DNA of 64,000 bases from Dimorphilus gyrociliatus (lineage: Eukaryota > Animalia > Annelida). The stretch's first letter is position 1. Every line of letters begins with the position of its first letter. The stretch covers positions 4,914,408 to 4,978,407 of the forward strand of contig CAJFCJ010000006.1 of the NCBI GenBank assembly GCA_904063045.1. The letters are read 5' to 3'. The position numbers and the translations under genes are program-made. This document shows, piece after piece, positions 11,260-29,431 of the stretch. Under the pieces are notes generated by a model. That model saw only the letters and a list, made by a program, of their open reading frames with translations. It ran no database searches and was not told the DNA's origin.

Positions 11260-11786
11260 TATATATATATATTTAATAGGGTAATAATATCTTTTTTCGT
11301 TTCAAAATAAAAAATTCTTTATTAAATATTTTTGAAATACAGTATATACGAAAGTAAAAGGCAAAAAAAGAAAAAGCTGTATATAAGCGAACAGGTGGAT
11401 TGTTTTGTTTTTCTCGATAGTTTGTCAGTAGAAGATAGGGAAAATAAGCCAAACACACCTGCTAATAAATTATCACTTAACAAAGAGTCTTGTTGCAAAA
11501 GATGTGCTTTAGGAGTCTATCGGTATAAAAAAGCCATCTCCTATGAAGAAAAACAGTCCTTTATGAAAGTTCAAACAGGATTGTCTTTGTGTCAGTGTTC
11601 GTAAACTGATAAGCGTGTGTCATATCGGCATAAAGTTTTCAATAACTTTCCAAATTAGCCCTTTAAATATTTCGTATATTATATTTTCTTAGTTCGATCC
11701 TTTCCGGACTGTGCGGCAGCTTTACAAAGAATAATAATAGAGACGTCTACGAAGTAAAGGGACATATCTAACAAATTTGTTTTCTG

Positions 11787-14700
11787 TTATTCGGCAATAA
11801 CTAGTTTTCTAGGAAAACTGTCGTCTGAATCACAATCTTCCTCTTCATTCCGTTTAATAATATCCGGCTTAGTTACAATAGGCTTTTTTGGAACCTTCTT
11901 CCCAGCACCGTCTTTCTTACCTTTTGCAGCTTTTTTCGGTTTATCACTTTTTTTCTCTTTGTCCTCAGTCTTCTTCGCCTGCTTTGGTTGTTTAGGTTGT
12001 TTAGGCTGTTTAGGTTGTTTAGGTTGTTTAGGTTGTTTAGGTTCCTTAGGCGGCTTTGGCTGTTTTGGTTGTTTAGGCTGCTTAGGTTGCCTTGGCTGTT
12101 TAGGTTTAGGTTCTTTAGGCTGTTTGGGCTTTTTCCCCTTGGGTTTCTTATCACTTAAAACGTTGGTTAAAGTAGCAGACGAAGAATCTAATAGTTCTTC
12201 AACTGGAGTTGAATTGTTAGCTGGTAGAGTATCAATTTCAGTTGGAACAGGTGTATTGCAAGCCGTTGACGTATCGGTTCCATCTGTCAATACTTGACCA
12301 ACAAGGTCTTCGTGCTCCGTACAAAATACCTTGCTTGAGTCCGTTTCTGGATCTGGTACCAATACTATATTACCATCAATATGATCTGAACAAAATGAGT
12401 TTGGGCACTCTTGACACATTCCTTTTTCAGTCACAGGTTTTCCGCAAATATCGCAAAAGTGCCAACCGCAAATCCACTTCCCTTTAGGTACTGAGTGTAA
12501 TTCAACACATTCCTTATGATAGCACTTGGGACAATTATTCTGATCACACAAGACCAAATCTCCCCCATCGCCACAATGATAACAGCTATCCTCATGCTTC
12601 CTTAGATGCATAAGTGAAGAAAGTGATCTCTTTTTTCTTCTCTTTTTCTTCTCTCTCTTCTCTTTTACAGGTGGTACTGGTCGTTTAGGTGGAGCTCCTA
12701 TAAATCCACTACAATTGGGAGAATCACAAGAGCACTTTTTTAAGCTATTTCCAAGGGCATCCAGATTGTAATTAAATGTTAACTCTTCTCCAGCTTTGAT
12801 GTTCCTATTTGCGAAAAGACCCACCCGATCATCGTCTAAAACATTCCATTTCTGAGTATCACAGTTAGGTTGGCAACTGTGGTTAATATAACGAGCTAAA
12901 TTGCCTCTTGGACCAGCGTCTATAAATCTGTTTTATTACAATGTTACGTATTAGTATACGGCTATTTATAAATATATAAATATGTAGAGCGAGTTTAATT
13001 TACACTCTGTTTTTATCTTTTACCTGTGCTTGTCCAGTGTAAGTATGTAGAAGTGAGAAACATCAAGTTCATCATACTTTTTGAGTCGGTGTTTGCATTC
13101 TTCCTCATCAATTACATCTCCTATATATTCAATTACGAAATCGCCAACTTTTATATCGTATTTTGCCTTTAGTCCCCAACCTTTCATGGACGTCCTAATA
13201 GGTACTGCTTCAACCCATTCTCGTTTTTGAAAACGCCTATTTTGACAGCGTTCTCCCGCTGGACAAATATCAACATTACATTCTGCCAAGGCCAAACGAT
13301 TCCAACATTGGCTTTGTGGTCCACAGGCGTCAGTGATAGAACAGTGACATGGTGTTGGCTCAAATTTCGGTTTTCTAGGTGCTGTTTTCCCAACGTATAT
13401 GTTAGATTCAATTAATCTATAAGTAGACTTTTCGTTTCTCATCTCACTTTCCATTTTTTCCTTAAACTCCACCCATTTGGTAAAAGCTTTTCCAGCATCT
13501 TCGATAGCTTTAAATAACATACGTTTAGAAAATCATGCTTTTTAGATTGAATATGTAAACTCTTACCTCGTTGGAAAGCAACTGCTAATGATTTATTTCC
13601 ACTAACTGATGTTTTTGATTTAGTATCACCCTCTTGGAAAAGAAAAACTCGAGCCTTATGCGACCAAAAGAAATCGTATGATCCGAAAAATCGAACAGCA
13701 AATTCGCCAGCATCGTGACCCAATTGTAAGATCTTTTCTGGTATATTTCGTGGGTGACAGATCTCTCCCGGCCACCAGCGATATTGTCCAACTTTAACCC
13801 AGACAATATCGCCATAGTGAGGTACTTTACCAACGATACAATCTGAACACAGCCAAGGTTCATTTTCTTTCACTTCAGTGGCTATACATTCTTTATGGAA
13901 TGCTAGGGGGCAACCATCACAACAGACCAATGTACCTCCGGCTAATTCTAATGGGAAAAACATGAAACAAAATTATTAGTAACATTTAAGCTCCAAATTT
14001 TCTCTATATAAAACAAAATACCTTTCTGGCAATTTAAGCAACTACTATAATGAATTCTCGCATGATGGCTGTTTGACTTTTTGGGAATGAAATGTTTACT
14101 GCATATCATATTCAGGCCAGCTAGATGACGGCATCCTGCAGCCACACAAAAGTCTGATATATGATAAGCAGTGGGGCACTTTATACACTTGTAAAATTGG
14201 CCTTTAGAAGCCTTACTGCGCCTATTTATCCAACAAGTCTGGCAGGTGTGTAGGGGACACTGGAATTTCTTATTATCAACGTTCGCTGTTGGTAACTCCT
14301 TCATACAAGCTTCATGGTAGAATCTATTGCAATTAGGCGTTGAACATTTAATCGTTGTGGAATCCCTCTTTGAACAGGAGAAGCAAGTATGAACATTTTC
14401 AGTGCAATCAGTGCAATAGAAGTCTTGTGCTGTATCCGTTATTTTTCTACCCTGAATGCATTTAACATGATACGAAGATGTGCATTTCTTGCATGTAATC
14501 ATTGTCGAATCACCCTTTTCTTTGTCACATTCCATACATATAGGTTTTTTTCTATAAAAAGGTGTGGTCATTAGTTTTAAAACCTCCAGAGTTTCTTCAA
14601 CGTTAAGTGGAGTAGCAGAAAAATCTACAGTAGGTTTCGTCAACTTAACGTGTTGCCTGGCTGGAGGAAGTGACTCTTCATTAGGTACACTTGAGTCGCT

Positions 14701-22403: not shown

Positions 22404-25400
22404 TATATATATAGATATATATATACAACTTTTAGAAAACAATATCCAACCAACTGAAGCACCGTAAATATCCTAAAAACGTTCGTACAGTGACTAGGTA
22501 GGGGTGGGTCTCAAGAGTGCAACAAGTTTGCACTTTGGGTAGGGGAGGCGAAAGTCACGTGATAGCCGCCCCTACCCCCTTTTTTCCAGATTCTTCTTCA
22601 GCATTAGCGGCCACCACGTGACGAATCCTGATCGCAAGACGACGACGATCAATAAAAATTAACAATAACAAAACTTAACAAAATCAAAAAAAACCATTAC
22701 ATCTAGTATACCAGAGAGAAATGACAGACTGGAATTTAATTCAATTCCCAACAATATCTCCTATAGTGTATATATATATATATTAAATATAAAATAATAA
22801 ATAATATATTAAATATATATACTATAAAAAAGCATCAATTCTCTTACATAGTTGATATTATTTTGTTTGATTGGTTATACATAACTTAATCCTTTATATA
22901 ACTATTTCTATAGATAGAGTATGTATAATGTATACAGTATACTTCAAAATGAGTAGATGCTTTAAATATAATCCAATAGAATATTTATGGTTGTCATTCT
23001 CTGTAACTCGGGTAACTGGGAAAGATAAAATACAGTTTTTTTATAAATCCTCGAAAAAGGAGAGAAGGTGAACAAAGAAACTTGCCAATCTAATTTTGTG
23101 GTTAACAAAAAACATAAGAATTCTGAAATGTACAGAAACCGCTAAGGAGTTCTTGTTACATCGTGTGGAGATTAGATCCTTTTCTAACTCTTATTACATT
23201 TTTTACAAGATTTTTATTATGTTAAAATTATAGGTACTCTTCCTCATAAAAACCACTTCATTAATATTTTTTTAGACGTAGGATAGAAGGAATGTTGTGA
23301 ATCAATAAATTTGAATCTGTTATTTCTCTCTGATACAACTAAGAATACTTACAAGCTTCTGAAGAGTTTTGTTCTTTAACATAATTAGACGGGAATAAAC
23401 CAATTTTCCCATTTGATTCGCCTTTCCACCAATCAGAGTCTAACTTTTCAATTATTCGAATGACGGAATTCTCAGATAACTCTAACTCATCTCCTTGCCG
23501 AGGTACGTAATCGTATAGTACTACGGCGGTGGTTGGTGCTAATGGGGGATTTTCAACCGGAATTGGATGCGGTGCGGGGGTAGGTTCTCGCGAACTCAAT
23601 GAGGAAGGTGATCTCACGCCCGCAACGTTGTTAGACTGTATGTTGACATACGTTGCCGGAAACCATCCGATTTTTCGATTTTTGGAATCAGTTCCCAATA
23701 TTTCACCTATATTTGCGTGAAATTATATAAATATAATTTTATGTAAACAAAGAGTTTCACGTAGCGTACCTTCCCACCAACCAGAAGGGGATTGCTTTCG
23801 AACTTGAATTAATTGTCCAATTTCGAAGGATAACTGCTCAACTCCTTGGGCTTTAAAAGGTGCAATAGCACAGACTATTTGCTTTTTATTATTTAGTCCA
23901 TCGGCTGACAATTTGCTAACTTCTGGATCCTGAGTTAAATGATTTTCGGCATTTTCATACAATGTCGGCTCTTCTTCAATAGGCTGTACATAGTTGTACG
24001 GAAAGACGCCTGACTTGCTTGGATCGGATTCTTTATAGCCGCTCCACCATTCTCCATTTTCTTTGGTTACAATAATAATCTTGAAGAAAATGATAAAATT
24101 AAAATAGTACTCAATTGTCATACTGTATAAGCTTAAAGTAAATACCTCTCCCTCCGAAAATGCTAAATCACCATCAACCTCACTAGAATAACTGTACGTA
24201 GCTTGGCATCGCGATTTTGTCTCTTGTTCAGTTATGGTTGTCGCTGACTTATCAATAGAAATACTTTTCACATTGTTATCAAAGCTTAGTTTTCTCGTAA
24301 AATTATCAGAAAAAGCTGATCCAAACTCAGAGAAAGATTCTCGTGGTTCTTCTATCAATTCAACAAAATCTTTTGGAAAGATTCCGATTTGTCCTCGAGA
24401 ATTTGTTCCTTTGATCCATGCAGGTTCGACTCCTTGCTGCATATTGTCATCGGCCGTTACAATTTCATCGGCTTGAAGAGTCAATTCGTCGGACTCTCTA
24501 GCTTCAAATGTATGGATAACTCTATACGATCGAGGAGTGGATGAGTTTCTTGGAGCTGTAAAGAATTACAGTTAAATCGTTTTTTTTTCAAGGAGAAATT
24601 TAGAATGAAAACTAATTTGTCTTCTAAGTAAAGAGTTTTTAAAGTTAAAAATAAAAACGAGCTTTCCCCTCTAATTATTATTAGCTCTAACTCTTTCGTT
24701 TTGTCCATTTCCTGTTTCAATAATTGCTATCGAAACCCATCAATTGTCCATTAAGCCAACATAAGCAGGCACACCAAACAAAAGACAAGACTACAAACAT
24801 ATACGAATTATGTACAGTAAATATAAGATTATTTCTTATTTAAAGTACAAGTTCTAAGATATAGCTAATGTTCTTTCTGTGGCATGTAAATTTGAACTGT
24901 TGTTAGTCTTTTCCAGAGATACCTTTAAATTGATCAAAATTTTTTAAATATAGCATAGATTCAAATTAAAGAGAAATATAATTGATTATCCTATATGACA
25001 TTGACCACTTATTTTGTTATTTGTTTCTTTCTTTCCTAAAGTTTAAAACTTAGAATATCAAAGATAAGTAGATTTATTGAACACACAAAACATAGGTTTG
25101 CATCATAAGCGACTATTGCAATATGCAGATGTATCAATACGTAAGGTGAAGTTATATCTTTCGGAAAAGCGTGACCAGATGGTAAGGATAGCAGACTCTT
25201 AACAAATAGTAAAAAATTGCTAGCATATTAATTCAAGTTAAAGAATTAGTTAACTATAGAAGGCTCAACTACTCGCCAAACGGTACCAGAATTTGAAACT
25301 TTTTTTCAAATACACCTGCTTAATATGAGTGGTTTTAGATATATAATGAATAAATAAAAGGAGTGCCAACATGTAAAATGCATTAATATGCTGATTCAAC

Positions 25401-28400
25401 ACGTATAACGCATACCTTCATTTGAATCACGAGTACCAAAAGCCTCAAAAACATTAATCTTTTGATCAGTAGTAGCTGCAAAATTATTATAATTATACTA
25501 GAATCCCTCAAACTGAATTTGTTTTAATTATAATTAAAAGCCAATGATATTAAATTGCGCACCTTTGTTTGAATCAAAAGCATTGCTACTAAAATTTTCC
25601 TTTGCTGAATTTTCTGCAAACACTGCAGCAATAACAAACATTTTTTTTATAGAACTATATAGTCTCAAAAAAAATTAATAAGATATCAATAAGCACCTTC
25701 TTTAGAATCATAATCTGGAAATGGTACAAAAGCATCTGCAATTTTATTGGAAGTTTCTGAAATTTTTAAATGAAAATTTTTTCTATTAATTTTTTTTTAT
25801 AAATGTTTTAATAGAAAGCTTTAATATCGAGTTTTCTTAAATATTCTCTTCTTTTTCAGTGAGTTTTATTATTTAAAGGGTTATTCCGTACCTTTTTTTG
25901 AATCAAAATCAGCAAAAGGCTCAAAGGTATTGTTAGTCTTATCAAATGTAGCTGTAAGAATTTTATAAAATCACAAAAAAATTAATTTAGAATTTTACTA
26001 AAATCATTGTCTTAGTTAATTTATAATTATTCACACCTTCACTTGAATCAAAAGCACCAAAATCTCCAAAAGCATCCGAAGGTTTTGAAAATACGTCTGT
26101 AAATTTTTTTTATATTTAGAAATCTTCAAAGCTAACTTATTGATTATCTGTTTTTATATATACACCGAAAGATAGTATAAATAAACATATTGTGCACACC
26201 ACAAAAGAGGTAAAGACATTACACATTGAACATACAAAACCACTTATATAATTACCAATTATTTTTTTCAACAATCAAACGATTTTTTTTAATACCGTAT
26301 ATAGTTAATATACAGTATATGTCTATCTAATTTTTACAACGCTTACCTTCTTTTGTATGTAGATTATTTAGAGCTTCAAAGCCACTTGGTTTCTTTTCGA
26401 CTTTTACTGTTGATATATACAGAAACGTAAATATGGAAAGATATAATTTTGTTTAATTCTTTTTTAAGATAGAGCTATGAAATGAAATGCATACCTTCAT
26501 TTGGGGCAAAATAACCAAAGGCGTTGAAATCATTAGACTTCTTGCCAGATGCTAAAAGAATTAACGAGCAATGTAACGTATAAGTTTGGATCAATAGTAG
26601 TTTTAGTTTTTCTTTTTTTACTTTTAAAAATAAGAATATTTACCTTTAGACCAAGAAGAATCTCCATTTGACCAATTATTTTTTAACTCTAGAGAATAAA
26701 TTTCATGTGTTATTTAAGTGCTATTTTTTTTAATTATAATATTAGGGGGCTATTATCTAAACGACTAAATACATACTATTTTTGTCAAGTTGGTTTTTCC
26801 ATTCTAACTCTTTAATTTCAACTTCATCTTTCATTTGATTAACAGTTTTCCTATAGCCATCACACTCCGCTTGCTTAGCTCTCAGATCATTTTCTTTCCC
26901 TTCTACTTCTTGTTTCTGTTCAAGGGTCTCCTTCTGGACTGACTGGTATTGCTGTCGAAGTGAATCTACGATCCTTGATTTATCATCTATGCTCTTTTGA
27001 AGGTTAATTATGCCTTCTTGCAAGGAACCTTTTTGTACGGTCACATGACTTTGTAAGGAATATCGCTGCGCTTGTAAGTTTTGTAGCCGCTCCTTAAGCA
27101 CAAAAGTTTCATTCTGCAGGGTGTCAATTTCTCTGACCGTATTATCCCTATATTGCCTCATCTCGTCAATATTGCTCGTAACAATTTGAATAGAATTGTT
27201 GGCTGCCTCTGTCTTTACTCTAGTTTCCATCTTCCTAGCTTCAATACTCTCTAATTCCAGATTGACATTAGCAATATGAGCCTGGAGTTGTTCTAGTGCG
27301 GCTTTTTGTTGTAATTTCTCTGTAAGAAGTTGCTCCGTTCTCTGTCTTTGCCATTCCATTTGTCTTTGTCTTTCCAACTCCTTTCTAGCCGCTTCACGTT
27401 GTTCGATAGCCTATTTAAAAGTAGATGAAATAGATCTCAGAATAAACTCGATTATAAGTCATTAAATTTATACCTTCCGCCTAGCCTCTTCTCTTTCAAG
27501 CTCTAGTTGTCGCTGCATTTGTTGATGCCTTTCAATCTCTTCCATTTTCTTCCTCTCCGCTTCCAATCTTGCACGTTCGATTCTTTCACGCTCTGCCCTT
27601 TCTGCAGCTTCACGCTTTTCATTCTCCATTTGCATTTGTTCACGAAGAGCTGCTCGCCTTTTCTCTAATTCTTCAGCTCCGCGTTCAAAGTTTTGTCGTC
27701 GTTTATCTTCAAAAGATCGAGCAAAGAGAGAATTATCTCCTTTACCGGGTGAGCCTGGTAAAGACGTTAAGTGTCCATCAGACATAAGTATATTTAAAGA
27801 TAACAAATCTTCGGCAAAAAGAATATATTAAGCTAAATATGATTCCCAAAAAAATAAAGTTTCATTTAAAAAATAAAACTAAATAAGCAAATCAATAGTC
27901 GGAAGGGGGAAAGTGAGGATTGGGGATAGTCAAACACAGAGAATATGTATTCAATTTGTAATTTAGAGAATACATTGTCATCGATATACTTTAAAAATTA
28001 ATTTTAAAATAAATTGAATTTAAAAACTATGTGAAAATTTAGAAATCTCATTTGTGCTATCATTCAACGAAATGAAAATAAATTATTAATAAATGAAAAG
28101 ATAAAATAAGCAAAATGTGAAAGAAAAAAAAGCCTGTTGATGTTACATAGCATTGTGAAAATCATATTTTGTTAAGATAAGTTTCTTTTTTTGTTGTTAA
28201 AAAGTTCTACTTAGTGGTAAAAAAAACTACCATTTGGAAAAGCATCAGAAAGCGATCGATATTCGTCAACATGTCCAGAGAAAGCATCAGTACCTGCATG
28301 CAAAAATTATCCCAATAGATGGCAATCACTCTTATTAATTCTTTTGCTACAGTCAGAACTTAGCATATTCTAATAATTGCAATTAGCCCATTTTTTATAA

Positions 28401-29431
28401 TCACATAAATTTTTCATCAAAACATGCAAATCAAGTTCTAGAGATAAAAACAAAAAATAATATACCTGCTGGAGCAGATTGGTCGCTGCCGCTAAGTTGC
28501 TGCATCTTTTGCCTGAAAATTTTTTAAAGATATCTTTTAGATAAATTCAATTCAGTACACAATTAGAAAAATTAAAAGGTTCAAGCAAATAAGCAAAAAA
28601 AGAAATGAACCTATAGGATGGAGGAATTAATTCCGGGGGTAATAGGGAAGGTAAAGCTCCACCGCTCTTTGATATATCCACCAAATGCATAGCAACACAA
28701 AATTCCTCTGACGTTAATTTTCCGTCTTTATCAACGTCTGCCAAGTTCCAAATGTTTGCTAAAATACTTGGAGCTAATCCAGTTTGACTAAGTATCATTC
28801 TCGCTTCCTGCCCATTCAAGTAACCTCTTTTTTGTCTATCATGACCATTGAACTGCTGCTTAAATTTTAGTTTTTGACTAATTGGCCATTCCGATGGAGA
28901 TATCAGAGTAGCTGGAGGGGGTCCAGAAGGGGGTCCAGAAGGAGGTGTAATCGTTGGGCTACTTGTTAGTATTCCACCTTGAACTATGAATGGGCTAGGT
29001 ATTGCAGGTTGTATCGAAGGAGCAAATACGTTATGTAAATTGGGACTTGACCTTCCCAAAGTTTGGAAACCCATAGGAGTGAACCTTCCAGCTTGTGGTG
29101 AGAAGTGTCCGGTTGTATCCTTTTGGAATGAGGGTGAGGGATCAAAAGTCAGCGAAACAGGTAGTTTAGGAGGCAGTTCGGTGCCATTCAATTTCTTTTT
29201 TATCAAGTACATTGCAATGGAAAACTCTTTCTTGTCCATTTTGCCATCTTTATTTATATCCGCCAAGGACCAAATATGACCTAGAACCGAAGGCGGAAGC
29301 GTTGACCTGAGGAAGAATTCTCTAGCTTGTGATCCATTTAGAAACCCATTTACCGGATTAAGATTAGTAAATTGTTCGTCGTGCTTTGCCCTTTCCTCGG
29401 GTGTTATTCGCCACGTTTCACCTATATTCAA
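19893..29431 (-). CDS. ITSN1: Intersectin, long form (EH-EH-coiled coil-mini-exon array-4xSH3-DH-PH-C2); the first coding exon lies upstream (possibly ATG at 30545)
   Basis: WRITPEERAKHDEQF (EH1), KFKQQFNGHDRQKRGYL (EH2), FEDKRRQNFERG coiled coil, SH3 domains, LLKPMQRVTRYPLLI (DH), PH, and DPYCEMSMGSHEQRTKV (C2). Confidence 0.96.
22357..22396. repeat. (TA)n microsatellite in an intersectin intron; similar runs at ~10631-10659, ~11069-11097 and ~11231-11253
   Basis: Directly visible TA runs. Confidence 0.9.
25416..26688 (-). other. Tandem array of eight symmetric phase-1 mini-exons within intersectin
   Basis: Exons 26644-26688 (45 nt), 26495-26551 (57), 26347-26406, 26037-26096, 25892-25951, 25697-25756, 25563-25622 and 25416-25475 (60 nt each), each flanked by AG and GT, open in frame and ending in ...AAG|GT. 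Confidence 0.85.

What the first reader, a model, noticed from the sequence alone, without database searches (positions are those of the whole stretch)
25416..26688. Battery of eight symmetric phase-1 mini-exons (six exactly 60 nt) encoding acidic Phe-motif peptides in intersectin: a possible combinatorial adaptor-binding code
Seen: between the coiled coil and SH3A lie consecutive AG/GT-bounded exons of 45, 57, 60, 60, 60, 60, 60 and 60 nt, all phase 1-1 and stop-free. All end in AAG|GT, most in a GATTC(A/T)A..-type 3' end, which points to serial exon duplication. Peptides: KLKNNWSNGDSSWSK; ASGKKSNDFNAFGYFAPNE; VKVEKKPSGFEALNNLHTKE; DVFSKPSDAFGDFGAFDSSE; ATFDKTNNTFEPFADFDSKK; ETSNKIADAFVPFPDYDSKE; VFAENSAKENFSSNAFDSNK; ATTDQKINVFEAFGTRDSNE. 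Every exon ends in G, so every junction codon is Gxx and any subset can be joined in frame without a stop. Introns are 74-250 nt, long enough for joint inclusion. Established: acidic Phe motifs (FGDF/DFGxF for AP-1 gamma-ear/GGA-GAE; FxDxF and DPF for the AP-2 alpha-ear) recruit clathrin adaptors, and I know no such exon array in vertebrate ITSN1/2. Inference: a splicing-tunable valency/specificity module (up to 2^8 isoforms, or mutually exclusive choice) for an endocytic scaffold.
Basis: partly seen in the sequence, partly recalled or inferred. Interest (0 to 1): 0.82.

Follow-up and report, generated by a model that had tools for sequence, protein, structure and literature searches.

The report
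Repeated mini-exons in intersectin linker
Eight tiny neighbouring exons in a small marine worm's intersectin gene are real and arose by repeated exon duplication, but the available RNA shows them all spliced together, so they look like a fixed string of short Phe-rich docking motifs for the endocytic machinery, not a splicing 'code'.

Summary
On the minus strand, between the coiled-coil exon and the SH3A exon of an intersectin gene (EH-EH-CC-SH3s-DH-PH-C2), lie eight AG/GT-bounded phase-1 exons of 45, 57 and 6x60 nt. Spliced contigs of two independent RNA data sets carry all nine junctions exactly as predicted, with all eight exons in one molecule.

E2-E8 are paralogues: mean identity in register is 0.53, against 0.28 for shuffles. 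A related species keeps at least seven of them one-to-one, with the same sizes and phases, 73% peptide identity and every aromatic residue kept, while the introns have drifted to shuffle level.

The region is not unique. Other invertebrate intersectins carry DPF/DxF/W-x-x-F motifs in the same linker. A starfish also encodes them in phase-1 mini-exons (36, 63, 60 nt). Vertebrate ITSN1 lacks them.

Mutually exclusive use is refuted. Combinatorial skipping has no support (unbranched contigs, unconserved flanking introns), although amphioxus RefSeq isoforms skip blocks of the homologous array.

The peptides contain no canonical DPF, FxDxF or NPF. Their recurring FxxFxDF core most resembles the Eps15 motif that binds the AP-2 beta2-appendage side site. 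Binding is untested.

The parts
26777..27409 (-). Last coiled-coil exon of intersectin. Its final base (A at 26777) starts the first codon of E1.
   Evidence: Joint 26688->26777 in X3, and a loose end of X1 contig 3 that matches the exon end. The orthologous exon P0002 is 71% identical.
26644..26688 (-). E1, 45 nt, phase 1-1, Trp motif (..NNWSNGDSSWSK). Not a paralogue of the 60-nt family.
   Evidence: Orthologue at L005 1522-1566, 45 nt. Not hit by the exon HMM.
26495..26551 (-). E2, 57 nt, phase 1-1 (..NDFNAFGYF..). A diverged member of the repeat family.
   Evidence: Exon-HMM hit at E=0.004 although it was not in the training set. Orthologue at L005 1638-1694.
26347..26406 (-). E3, 60 nt, phase 1-1 (..PSGFEALNNL..).
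   Evidence: Orthologue at L005 1762-1821.
26037..26096 (-). E4, 60 nt (..SDAFGDFGAFDS..). The only unit with a gamma-ear type FGDF/DFGxF match; it also carries the FxDF core.
   Evidence: Orthologue at L005 1976-2035.
25892..25951 (-). E5, 60 nt (..NTFEPFADFDS..). Its FADF core is identical to that of the Eps15 beta2 side-site peptide.
   Evidence: Orthologue at L005 2111-2170.
25697..25756 (-). E6, 60 nt (..DAFVPFPDYDS..).
   Evidence: The orthologue was not captured because it falls in a gap between contigs L005 and L001.
25563..25622 (-). E7, 60 nt (..ENFSSNAFDS..).
   Evidence: Orthologue at L001 51-110.
25416..25475 (-). E8, 60 nt (..NVFEAFGTRDS..).
   Evidence: Orthologue at L001 211-270. 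The joint E8->SH3A is also seen in X2, a closer relative.
24146..24555 (-). SH3A exon, joined to E8 in phase 1. Its SH3A-SH3B linker part (24299-24340) holds a conserved canonical FxDxF (FSDNF).
25225..25345 (-). Conserved non-coding element inside the 860-nt intron between E8 and SH3A. Role unknown; possibly cis-regulatory.
   Evidence: About 90% identical to the relative, while the rest of the intron is near shuffle level. Single copy, no Rfam match, no significant fold.

Best explanation
The eight exons are ordinary exons of intersectin that are included together. They encode a roughly 155-residue linker between the coiled coil and SH3A; disorder of this linker is inferred, not tested. Seven of the exons (E2-E8) descend from one short symmetric exon that was duplicated in tandem before this species and its relative split. 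Each unit carries one Phe cluster ([DN]xF-xx-F-xD-F/Y) followed by an acidic/polar tail (DSxE/K). The array is this lineage's enlarged version of a motif-rich linker that most invertebrate intersectins have at the same place and that vertebrates lost. Its most likely job is multivalent, low-affinity docking of intersectin onto endocytic hub domains. The first candidate is the AP-2 beta2-appendage side site, followed by the alpha-appendage DxF site and possibly the FCHo mu-homology domain. Number of copies sets avidity. Shown here: exon reality, joint inclusion, paralogy, orthology, purifying selection, and homology of the region across phyla. Inferred: disorder, the binding partners, and constitutive rather than regulated inclusion.
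For: Gene identity: EH x2, SH3s, RhoGEF, PH_13 and C2, and the best full-length relatives are named intersectin. Reality and joint inclusion: nine exact joints in X1 and X3, and one X1 contig runs from the coiled-coil exon end through E1-E8 into SH3A. Duplication: paralogue identity 0.53 against 0.28 for shuffles. An exon HMM finds E2 at E=0.004 and no further copies. Selection: seven orthologous exons have identical length and phase and 73-87% nucleotide identity. At the peptide level 93 of 127 residues are identical and every aromatic residue is kept, whereas the introns are at shuffle level. Homology of the region: Acanthaster, Asterias, Lytechinus, Branchiostoma, Tubulanus, Lineus, Lingula, Paralvinella, molluscs and arthropods all have DPF/DxF/W-x-x-F clusters just upstream of SH3A; platypus and Polypterus ITSN1 have none. 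Gene structure: Acanthaster encodes its motifs in phase 1-1 exons of 36, 63 and 60 nt that end in G, and Paralvinella has roughly 78- and 63-nt exons there. Partner: the Eps15 peptide SFGDGFADFSTL binds the beta2 side site, the motif is [F/L]xxGFxDF or [F/L]xn[F/L]xDF, and intersectin 1/2 were side-site-dependent beta2 interactors by mass spectrometry (PMC1540706). E4 (FGDF), E5 (FADF) and E6 (FPDY) carry the FxD[FY] core, and E4' and E5' keep it in the relative. DxF is an accepted class of alpha-appendage top-site motif. FCHO1 muHD binds intersectin 1 and Phe-rich arrays (PMC4921775).
Against: No binding was tested. The array has no canonical DP[FW], FxDxF, WxxF, NPF or clathrin box. The Phe-Phe spacing in FxxFxDF is one residue shorter than in the Eps15 peptide, and the Gly turn is absent in most units. 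The RNA evidence consists of assembled contigs, which drop rare variants. Two joints were not displayed. The X3 depths (918 / 711 / 601 / 280 / 791) are uneven across the E3|E4 and E8|SH3A junctions, so a minor or block-skipping isoform is not excluded. Amphioxus RefSeq isoforms do skip blocks of the homologous array.
Confidence: 0.6

Rival explanations
1. The exons are cassette exons used combinatorially (up to 2^8 isoforms) or mutually exclusively, so that splicing tunes the valency or specificity of adaptor binding.
For: All exons are phase 1-1, and any subset stays in frame without a stop. Several donors are weak (GTGTGA, GTGCTT, GTGCGC, GTACGG). Branchiostoma floridae RefSeq isoforms X15, X18/X19 and X3 lack 60-, 89- and 12-residue blocks of the homologous DPF array. 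Uneven X3 depths and two undisplayed joints leave room for minor forms. SLiM-bearing alternative exons are a known theme (PMC3424572, listed; the paper itself was not read).
Against: Mutual exclusivity is refuted, because all eight exons sit in a single contig in X1 and in chained contigs in X3. In X3, E4-E8 and CC+E1-E3 are unbranched contigs, and the only breaks (E3|E4 and E8|SH3A) coincide with retained-intron contigs 16 and 15. No skipping joint is listed. The flanking introns are not conserved, unlike typical regulated cassettes. There are no docking- or selector-like complementarities above chance. Lineus, Tubulanus and Crassostrea RefSeq isoform sets show no variation in this linker. 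Symmetric phase is required for duplication in any case.
Confidence: 0.1
2. The array is a binding module for partners other than AP-2. It could bind the AP-1 gamma-ear or GGA GAE domains, the FCHo/SGIP mu-homology domain, or act as aromatic 'stickers' that drive condensation with Eps15/FCHo.
For: E4 matches the gamma-ear core FG[PDE]F and DFGxF, and this is conserved in the relative. FCHO1 muHD binds intersectin 1, closely spaced DPF triads and other Phe-rich sequences. Composition is 12% Phe, 17% acidic and 28% S/T/N. A canonical FxDxF already sits in the SH3A-SH3B linker, so the array may serve a different partner.
Against: Only one of the eight units fits the gamma-ear consensus. The Phe spacing (3 residues) differs from the DPFx2-3DPF triad bound by muHD.
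Confidence: 0.22
3. The array is only a flexible spacer between the coiled coil and the SH3 block. Its repeats are a neutral by-product of exon duplication.
For: No canonical motif of any curated class occurs more than once. Vertebrate intersectins function without it.
Against: Peptide identity to the relative (73%) equals that of the folded SH3A and coiled-coil exons (68-71%). Every Phe/Trp/Tyr is conserved while the introns are randomised. Aromatic-acidic motifs recur at this position across at least six phyla.
Confidence: 0.06

Closest known systems
Eps15 motif domain (DPF array plus the beta2-appendage side-site peptide SFGDGFADFSTL, PDB 2IV9; PMC1540706, PMC4921775)
   Same: An EH-EH(-EH)-coiled-coil scaffold followed by a stretch with many short Phe/Asp motifs. 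The FxDF core (FADF) is identical to E5. Avidity comes from motif number. Intersectin itself was recovered as a side-site-dependent beta2 interactor.
   Different: Eps15 uses canonical DPF, which is absent here. Its Phe spacing and Gly turn differ. The array here lies in the middle of the protein, ahead of the SH3 domains. Binding was not tested.
CC-to-SH3A linker of other invertebrate intersectins (for example Acanthaster planci XP_022081646, Branchiostoma floridae XP_035687068, Tubulanus, Lingula, Paralvinella)
   Same: Same position in the same protein, with aromatic-acidic motifs (DPFxxF, FADFS, W-x-x-AF). In Acanthaster the motifs are also encoded by phase 1-1 mini-exons of 36, 63 and 60 nt that end in G.
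   Different: Those species have fewer and less regular units. Here there are seven clearly paralogous units, six of exactly 60 nt, and the Pro of DPF is replaced by A/T/V. In amphioxus the cassettes are larger (180 and about 87 nt) and are annotated as alternative.
Vertebrate ITSN1 SH3A-SH3B linker, the known AP-2 binding site (Pechstein et al. 2010, as cited in PMC8044098)
   Same: A linker of intersectin that recruits AP-2 appendages. This gene also has a conserved FxDxF (FSDNF) at that homologous position.
   Different: It is a different linker. Vertebrate ITSN1 has no motif array between the coiled coil and SH3A.
Tandem arrays of short symmetric exons encoding repeat peptides (collagen 54-bp exons, titin PEVK exons; from my own knowledge, not tested here)
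   Same: Serial duplication of a short exon with equal phases at both ends, with one peptide unit per exon.
   Different: PEVK exons are heavily alternatively spliced, and no skipping was seen here. Those repeats are structural or elastic, not docking motifs.
Alternatively included DDPF-rich block of molluscan intersectins (RefSeq isoform pairs of Mya, Dreissena, Haliotis, Babylonia, Physella)
   Same: A Phe/Asp motif array in intersectin whose presence is controlled by splicing.
   Different: It lies near residue 1000, downstream of the first SH3 domain (SH3A starts near residue 725-750 in these proteins). It is one 220-530-residue block and it is canonical DPF.

Membership tests
Intersectin (ITSN/Dap160) | Two N-terminal EH domains | tested here: met
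   PF12763 EH, two stretches, E=4.9e-40.
Intersectin (ITSN/Dap160) | Central coiled coil followed by multiple SH3 domains | tested here: met
   At least three SH3 domains are found in 24565-23342. The stretch 27827-26777 is K/E/R/Q-rich, has no Pfam domain, and its orthologue has only a weak CCDC39 hit. Coiled-coil propensity was not formally computed.
Intersectin (ITSN/Dap160) | C-terminal DH-PH-C2 (long form) | tested here: met
   RhoGEF, PH_13 and C2 hits.
Intersectin (ITSN/Dap160) | Closest relatives are intersectins | tested here: met
   47-57% identity over the EH region to proteins named intersectin-1-like in echinoderms, molluscs, amphioxus and an annelid.
Tandemly duplicated exon array | Units alignable in register above chance, with the same length and phase | tested here: met
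   Identity 0.53 against 0.28 +/- 0.014 for shuffles across E3-E8. E2 is recovered by the exon HMM. E1 is not a member.
Mutually exclusive exon cluster | Only one unit per mature transcript | tested here: not met
   All eight exons are joined consecutively in contigs of X1 and X3.
Regulated cassette-exon array | Transcripts lacking individual units | tested here: inconclusive
   No skipping joint is listed, and the contigs across E4-E8 and CC-E3 are unbranched. However, only contigs were available, not raw reads, and two joints were not displayed.
Regulated cassette-exon array | Conserved flanking intron sequence | tested here: not met
   Orthologous introns are within about 2 SD of shuffles.
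AP-2 alpha-appendage platform ligands | DP[FW] or FxDxF motifs | tested here: not met
   There are 0 DP[FW] and 0 FxDxF in the 155 residues. Only three looser DxF motifs occur (DVF, DAF, DAF).
AP-1 gamma-ear / GGA-GAE ligands | Aromatic-G-[PDE]-[aromatic/L/M] core | tested here: inconclusive
   One match (FGDF/DFGAF in E4), conserved in the relative. The other seven exons do not match.
AP-2 beta2-appendage side-site ligands (Eps15 type) | [F/L]xxGFxDF or [F/L]xn[F/L]xDF | tested here: inconclusive
   The FxD[FY] core is present in E4, E5 and E6, with an upstream Phe at n=2 or n=6. The Gly turn is absent. Binding cannot be tested with these tools.
EH-domain ligands | NPF | tested here: not met
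   0 NPF. Only the N-x-F variants NDF, NAF, NTF and NVF occur.

The most novel reading that the evidence does not exclude
The array is used in blocks, not as a fixed unit. There are two possible routes. In the first, E4-E8 are skipped together, the only skipping pattern that the contig topology and uneven depths in X3 allow. In the second, transcripts read through or end in the long, partly conserved intron after E8, where a stop follows within 2-5 codons. That would give an Eps15-like short intersectin (EH-EH-coiled coil-motif array) without the SH3/DH-PH-C2 part. Either route would let the worm switch between a pure adaptor-docking scaffold and the full signalling scaffold. The amphioxus block-skipping isoforms would then be an ancient counterpart.
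Probability: 0.15. Interest if true: 0.6.

Novelty: new member of a known kind. Interest (0 to 1): 0.36.

Why it matters
Intersectin is a central scaffold of clathrin-mediated and synaptic-vesicle endocytosis. Its AP-2 contact has been mapped only in vertebrates, to the SH3A-SH3B linker. This work shows that most invertebrate intersectins carry a second, uncharacterised Phe/Trp motif array between the coiled coil and SH3A. The array is often built from symmetric mini-exons, is enlarged to seven paralogous units in this worm, and has been lost in vertebrates. If these units bind AP-2 appendages, especially the beta2 side site used by Eps15, intersectin and Eps15 would share a docking logic. The copy-number differences between phyla would then be a natural avidity series. 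The finding also gives a clean, datable example of serial mini-exon duplication kept by selection in a compact genome. It is not a new kind of system, and the attractive 'splicing code' idea is not borne out by the data available.

Tried and rejected
1. Hidden extra or decayed exon copies: an HMM of 11 exons found only E2-E8 in the 64 kb window.
2. Dscam-like docking/selector pairing or intron-intron looping: the best inverted repeat (25323-25353 with 26219-26249, 31 nt, 74% complementary) is at chance level. 5 of 60 shuffles reach it in the window and 12 of 60 in the relative.
3. A small RNA in the region: Rfam gave only a sub-threshold snoRNA-like hit (E=0.89). The conserved intron element has no significant fold (z=-0.57). 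Its best reading frame shows 3 non-synonymous and 0 synonymous changes, which is not coding-like.
4. Alternative splicing of this linker in other species: Acanthaster X1/X2 differ elsewhere. Lineus, Tubulanus and Crassostrea isoform sets do not vary here. Only Branchiostoma does.
5. Protein searches with the SH3A and coiled-coil exons found only the relative's genomic ORFs and no transcript-derived protein spanning the array.
6. Steps left out: the spliced 155-residue peptide has no reference, so it was not sent to any protein search, atlas or structure prediction. Disorder is therefore inferred, not tested.
7. Identifying the organism with the protein atlas gave nothing useful.
8. E6' of the relative lies in a gap between contigs and was not recovered.
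9. An X2 contig that diverges 7 nt before the end of E4 (depth about 1.3) could not be interpreted.
Full report
**The observation.** The gene lies on the minus strand. Stop-free segments and Pfam scans give the full intersectin architecture:
- two EH domains (29470-28550)
- a K/E/R/Q-rich coiled-coil stretch (27827-26777)
- at least three SH3 domains (24565-23342)
- RhoGEF plus PH_13 (21518-20458)
- C2 (20435-19896)

| Exon | Window coordinates (minus strand) | Length |
|---|---|---|
| E1 | 26688-26644 | 45 nt |
| E2 | 26551-26495 | 57 nt |
| E3 | 26406-26347 | 60 nt |
| E4 | 26096-26037 | 60 nt |
| E5 | 25951-25892 | 60 nt |
| E6 | 25756-25697 | 60 nt |
| E7 | 25622-25563 | 60 nt |
| E8 | 25475-25416 | 60 nt |

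All have AG before and GT after, and all end in AAG. The introns are 92, 88, 250, 85, 135, 74 and 87 nt. The coiled-coil exon ends in A at 26777 in phase 1, which gives the K that opens E1. E8 joins the SH3A exon at 24555 in phase 1 across an 860-nt intron. All eight peptides are as quoted.

**Are the exons real?** One search for sequencing runs returned two RNA libraries and one run of unrecorded type. X1 is a coral metatranscriptome and X2 a marine metatranscriptome. X3 is from 'organism A' (2017), and its spliced contigs show that it too is RNA. Laid on 23400-29399, X1 and X3 match at 99% or more.

Together they carry every predicted junction at exactly the predicted bases: 26777|26688, 26644|26551, 26495|26406, 26347|26096, 26037|25951, 25892|25756, 25697|25622, 25563|25475 and 25416|24555.

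One 635-nt X1 contig runs from the end of the coiled-coil exon through E1-E8 into SH3A. X2, a 90-95% relative, shows the E8|SH3A junction. So the exons are real, and all eight occur together in one mRNA. That alone excludes mutually exclusive use.

**Is there skipping?** Only assembled contigs were available, and these drop rare variants. In X3 the region is covered by three pieces:
- a contig with the coiled-coil exon plus E1-E3 (depth 918)
- a short junction contig E3|E4 (711)
- a contig with E4-E8 (601)

These are followed by a junction contig E8|SH3A (280) and the SH3A contig (791). The two break points coincide with retained-intron contigs: contig 16 over the 250-nt intron (depth 21) and contig 15 over the 860-nt intron (depth about 150).

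Within E4-E8 and within CC-E3 there is no branching. Appreciable skipping of individual exons is therefore not supported. The uneven depths, and the two joints the tool did not display, leave room for a minor form. By topology that form could only be en-bloc skipping of E4-E8 or of the whole array.

Three further lines point against regulated cassettes:
- The introns flanking the mini-exons are not conserved in the relative. Matches are within about 2 SD of shuffles.
- There is no docking/selector-type complementarity. The best inverted repeat is at chance level.

**Origin.** The six 60-nt exons are 42-67% identical to each other in register. The mean is 0.53, against 0.28 +/- 0.014 for shuffles. 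An HMM built from them and their orthologues also recovers the 57-nt E2 (E=0.004), and nothing else in the 64 kb. E1, a Trp motif, is not part of the family. So E2-E8 derive from serial duplication of one short exon.

**A related species.** Searching with the SH3A and coiled-coil exons found genomic contigs of a relative, with 68-72% protein identity in the SH3A, coiled-coil and EH exons. It has E1' (45 nt), E2' (57), E3', E4', E5', E7' and E8' (60 each) in the same order and phase. Nucleotide identity to the window is 73-87%. E6' falls in an assembly gap.

At the peptide level 93 of 127 residues are identical, and every Phe, Trp and Tyr is kept. Codon differences are 20 synonymous and 34 non-synonymous. 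Peptide conservation equals that of the folded domains next door, while the introns are randomised. That indicates purifying selection on each unit. The duplications pre-date the split of the two species. In the relative, E1' and E2' end in A, so 'every exon ends in G' is not a conserved rule.

**The region elsewhere.** A full HMMER scan with the EH exon, and a word search seeded with a mollusc intersectin, returned full-length intersectins from many phyla. I extracted the 150-200 residues upstream of the first SH3 domain. Nearly all invertebrates have aromatic-acidic motifs there:

| Taxon | Motifs in the linker upstream of SH3A |
|---|---|
| Acanthaster, Asterias, Lytechinus | DLFASFG, DDPFAS, DPFSAF, DPFGAFADFS..FDFG |
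| Branchiostoma | up to eight DPF plus DAF/DFF |
| Tubulanus, Lineus | DAF, DPF, DVF, W-x-x-F |
| Lingula | W-G-x-AF x3 |
| Molluscs | W-x-x-F/AF |
| Arthropods | AWG/DAWG |
| Paralvinella (annelid) | AFGW, AFSTAF, DPW, VDVF, SAW |
| Platypus, Polypterus ITSN1 | none |

In the Acanthaster genome the motifs are encoded by phase 1-1 exons of 36, 63 and 60 nt, each ending in G. Paralvinella has exons of roughly 78 and 63 nt there. So 'one motif per symmetric mini-exon' is old, and the worm has an enlarged and regularised version of it.

RefSeq isoform sets show no variation in this linker in Acanthaster, Lineus, Tubulanus or Crassostrea. Branchiostoma floridae isoforms X15, X18/X19 and X3 lack 60, 89 and 12 residues of the DPF array, which correspond to cassette exons of 180 and about 87 nt and to an internal acceptor. 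Splicing control of this array therefore has a precedent in gene models, but not in this worm's data.

**What the peptides may do.** A regex scan of the spliced 155 residues (motif definitions from memory and from the papers read) gives:
- DP[FW] 0, FxDxF 0, WxxF 0, NPF 0, clathrin box 0, beta2 top-site helix motif 0
- [DN]xF 8, FxxF 8, FxxFxx[FY] 4
- the gamma-ear core FG[PDE]F once, in E4

The best experimentally defined match comes from Schmid et al. 2006 (PMC1540706). The Eps15 peptide SFGDGFADFSTL binds the side site of the AP-2 beta2 appendage (PDB 2IV9), with the motif [F/L]xxGFxDF or, more loosely, [F/L]xn[F/L]xDF. Intersectin 1 and 2 were beta2 interactors that depended on that side site.

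E4 (FGDF), E5 (FADF, the same core as Eps15) and E6 (FPDY) carry FxD[FY] with an upstream Phe. The relative keeps these in E4' and E5' and has FNDF in E2'. Starfish and sea urchin have AFADFS.

DxF is also an accepted class of alpha-appendage top-site motif. FCHO1 muHD binds intersectin 1 and Phe-rich arrays (PMC4921775).

I therefore favour multivalent, low-affinity docking to AP-2 appendages, beta2 side site first, with the number of units setting avidity. This step is inference; nothing here tests binding.

Notably, the SH3A-SH3B linker of this gene holds a conserved canonical FxDxF (FSDNF, 24299-24340). That is the position where vertebrate ITSN1 binds AP-2 (PMC8044098).

**The long intron.** The 860-nt intron after E8 contains a roughly 120-nt element (25345-25225) that is about 90% identical in the relative, while the rest of the intron is near shuffle level. 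The element is single copy, has no Rfam match and has no significant fold. Its substitutions are not coding-like.

X3 covers this intron at about 20% of exon depth, and X1 does not cover it at all. Read-through from E8 meets a stop after 5 codons here and after 2 in the relative. The product would be an EH-EH-coiled coil-array protein without SH3/DH-PH-C2.

Another agent's note names this genome Dimorphilus gyrociliatus (not tested by me). If that is right, a published observation offers the ordinary explanation. In that species long introns are retained more often, and long introns tend to hold open-chromatin regulatory regions (PMC7854359). On that reading this is inefficient splicing of a long intron that houses an enhancer. 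I could not decide this.

**Verdict.** The functional reading is plausible by homology but mis-assigned in detail and untested. The combinatorial or mutually exclusive splicing code is not supported, and the mutually exclusive version is refuted.

The feature is a lineage-specific expansion of a widespread linker motif array of invertebrate intersectins. I found no description of that array in the papers searched, although it is visible in public protein records. It is a new member of a known kind (a SLiM array in an endocytic scaffold, built by tandem exon duplication) and is of moderate interest.

**Limits.**
- Only the one read-laying run saw contigs only.
- The spliced peptide has no reference, so it was not sent to protein searches or structure prediction.
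- E6' of the relative was not recovered.
- The phylum was not established by my own tests.

Noticed in passing
window 25225-25345 (minus strand); L001 428-545: A roughly 120-nt non-coding element inside the 860-nt intron between E8 and SH3A is about 90% identical between the two species, while the rest of the intron is near shuffle level. It is single copy, has no Rfam match and no significant fold, and its substitutions are not coding-like. It may be a cis-regulatory element.
   Followed up: partly
window 24556-25415: Run X3 covers this intron at depth about 150-170 (exons 600-900), whereas the 476-nt intron at 27754-28229 has depth 0 and the 250-nt intron about 21. X1 shows no coverage of it. 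Read-through from E8 stops after 5 codons, which would give an Eps15-like short intersectin without the SH3/DH-PH-C2 part. This could be plain retention of a long intron or a real short isoform.
   Followed up: partly
window 24299-24340 (minus strand): The SH3A-SH3B linker contains E-S-F-S-E-F-G-S-A-F-S-D-N-F, which includes a canonical FxDxF (FSDNF). From FGSAFSDNFTRKLSFD onward it is identical in the relative. It lies at the position where vertebrate ITSN1 binds AP-2.
   Followed up: partly
L011 (Branchiostoma floridae) 11680-11859, 12521-12604, 13324-13401: Amphioxus RefSeq intersectin isoforms skip cassette exons that encode 7 DxF motifs (180 nt), a second block (about 87 nt), or 12 residues via an internal acceptor. 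All of these lie in the coiled-coil-to-SH3A linker.
   Followed up: yes
proteins P0164, P0166, P0170, P0180, P0185, P0187 (mollusc intersectins): Mollusc RefSeq isoform pairs differ by a 220-530-residue insert near residue 1000. In Mya and Dreissena the insert is packed with DDPF/DDLF repeats, so it is a splicing-controlled DPF array at another place in intersectin.
   Followed up: partly
L009 (Acanthaster planci) ~11488-11523, 11777-11839, 12068-12127: The starfish intersectin encodes its DPF motifs in phase 1-1 mini-exons of 36, 63 and 60 nt, each ending in G. This is the same architecture as in the window.
   Followed up: yes
window 26043 (run X2): A low-depth X2 contig matches E4 up to 7 nt before its end and then continues for 183 nt with unrelated sequence. 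It could be a diverged relative, a paralogous motif exon of another organism, or an assembly artefact.
   Followed up: no
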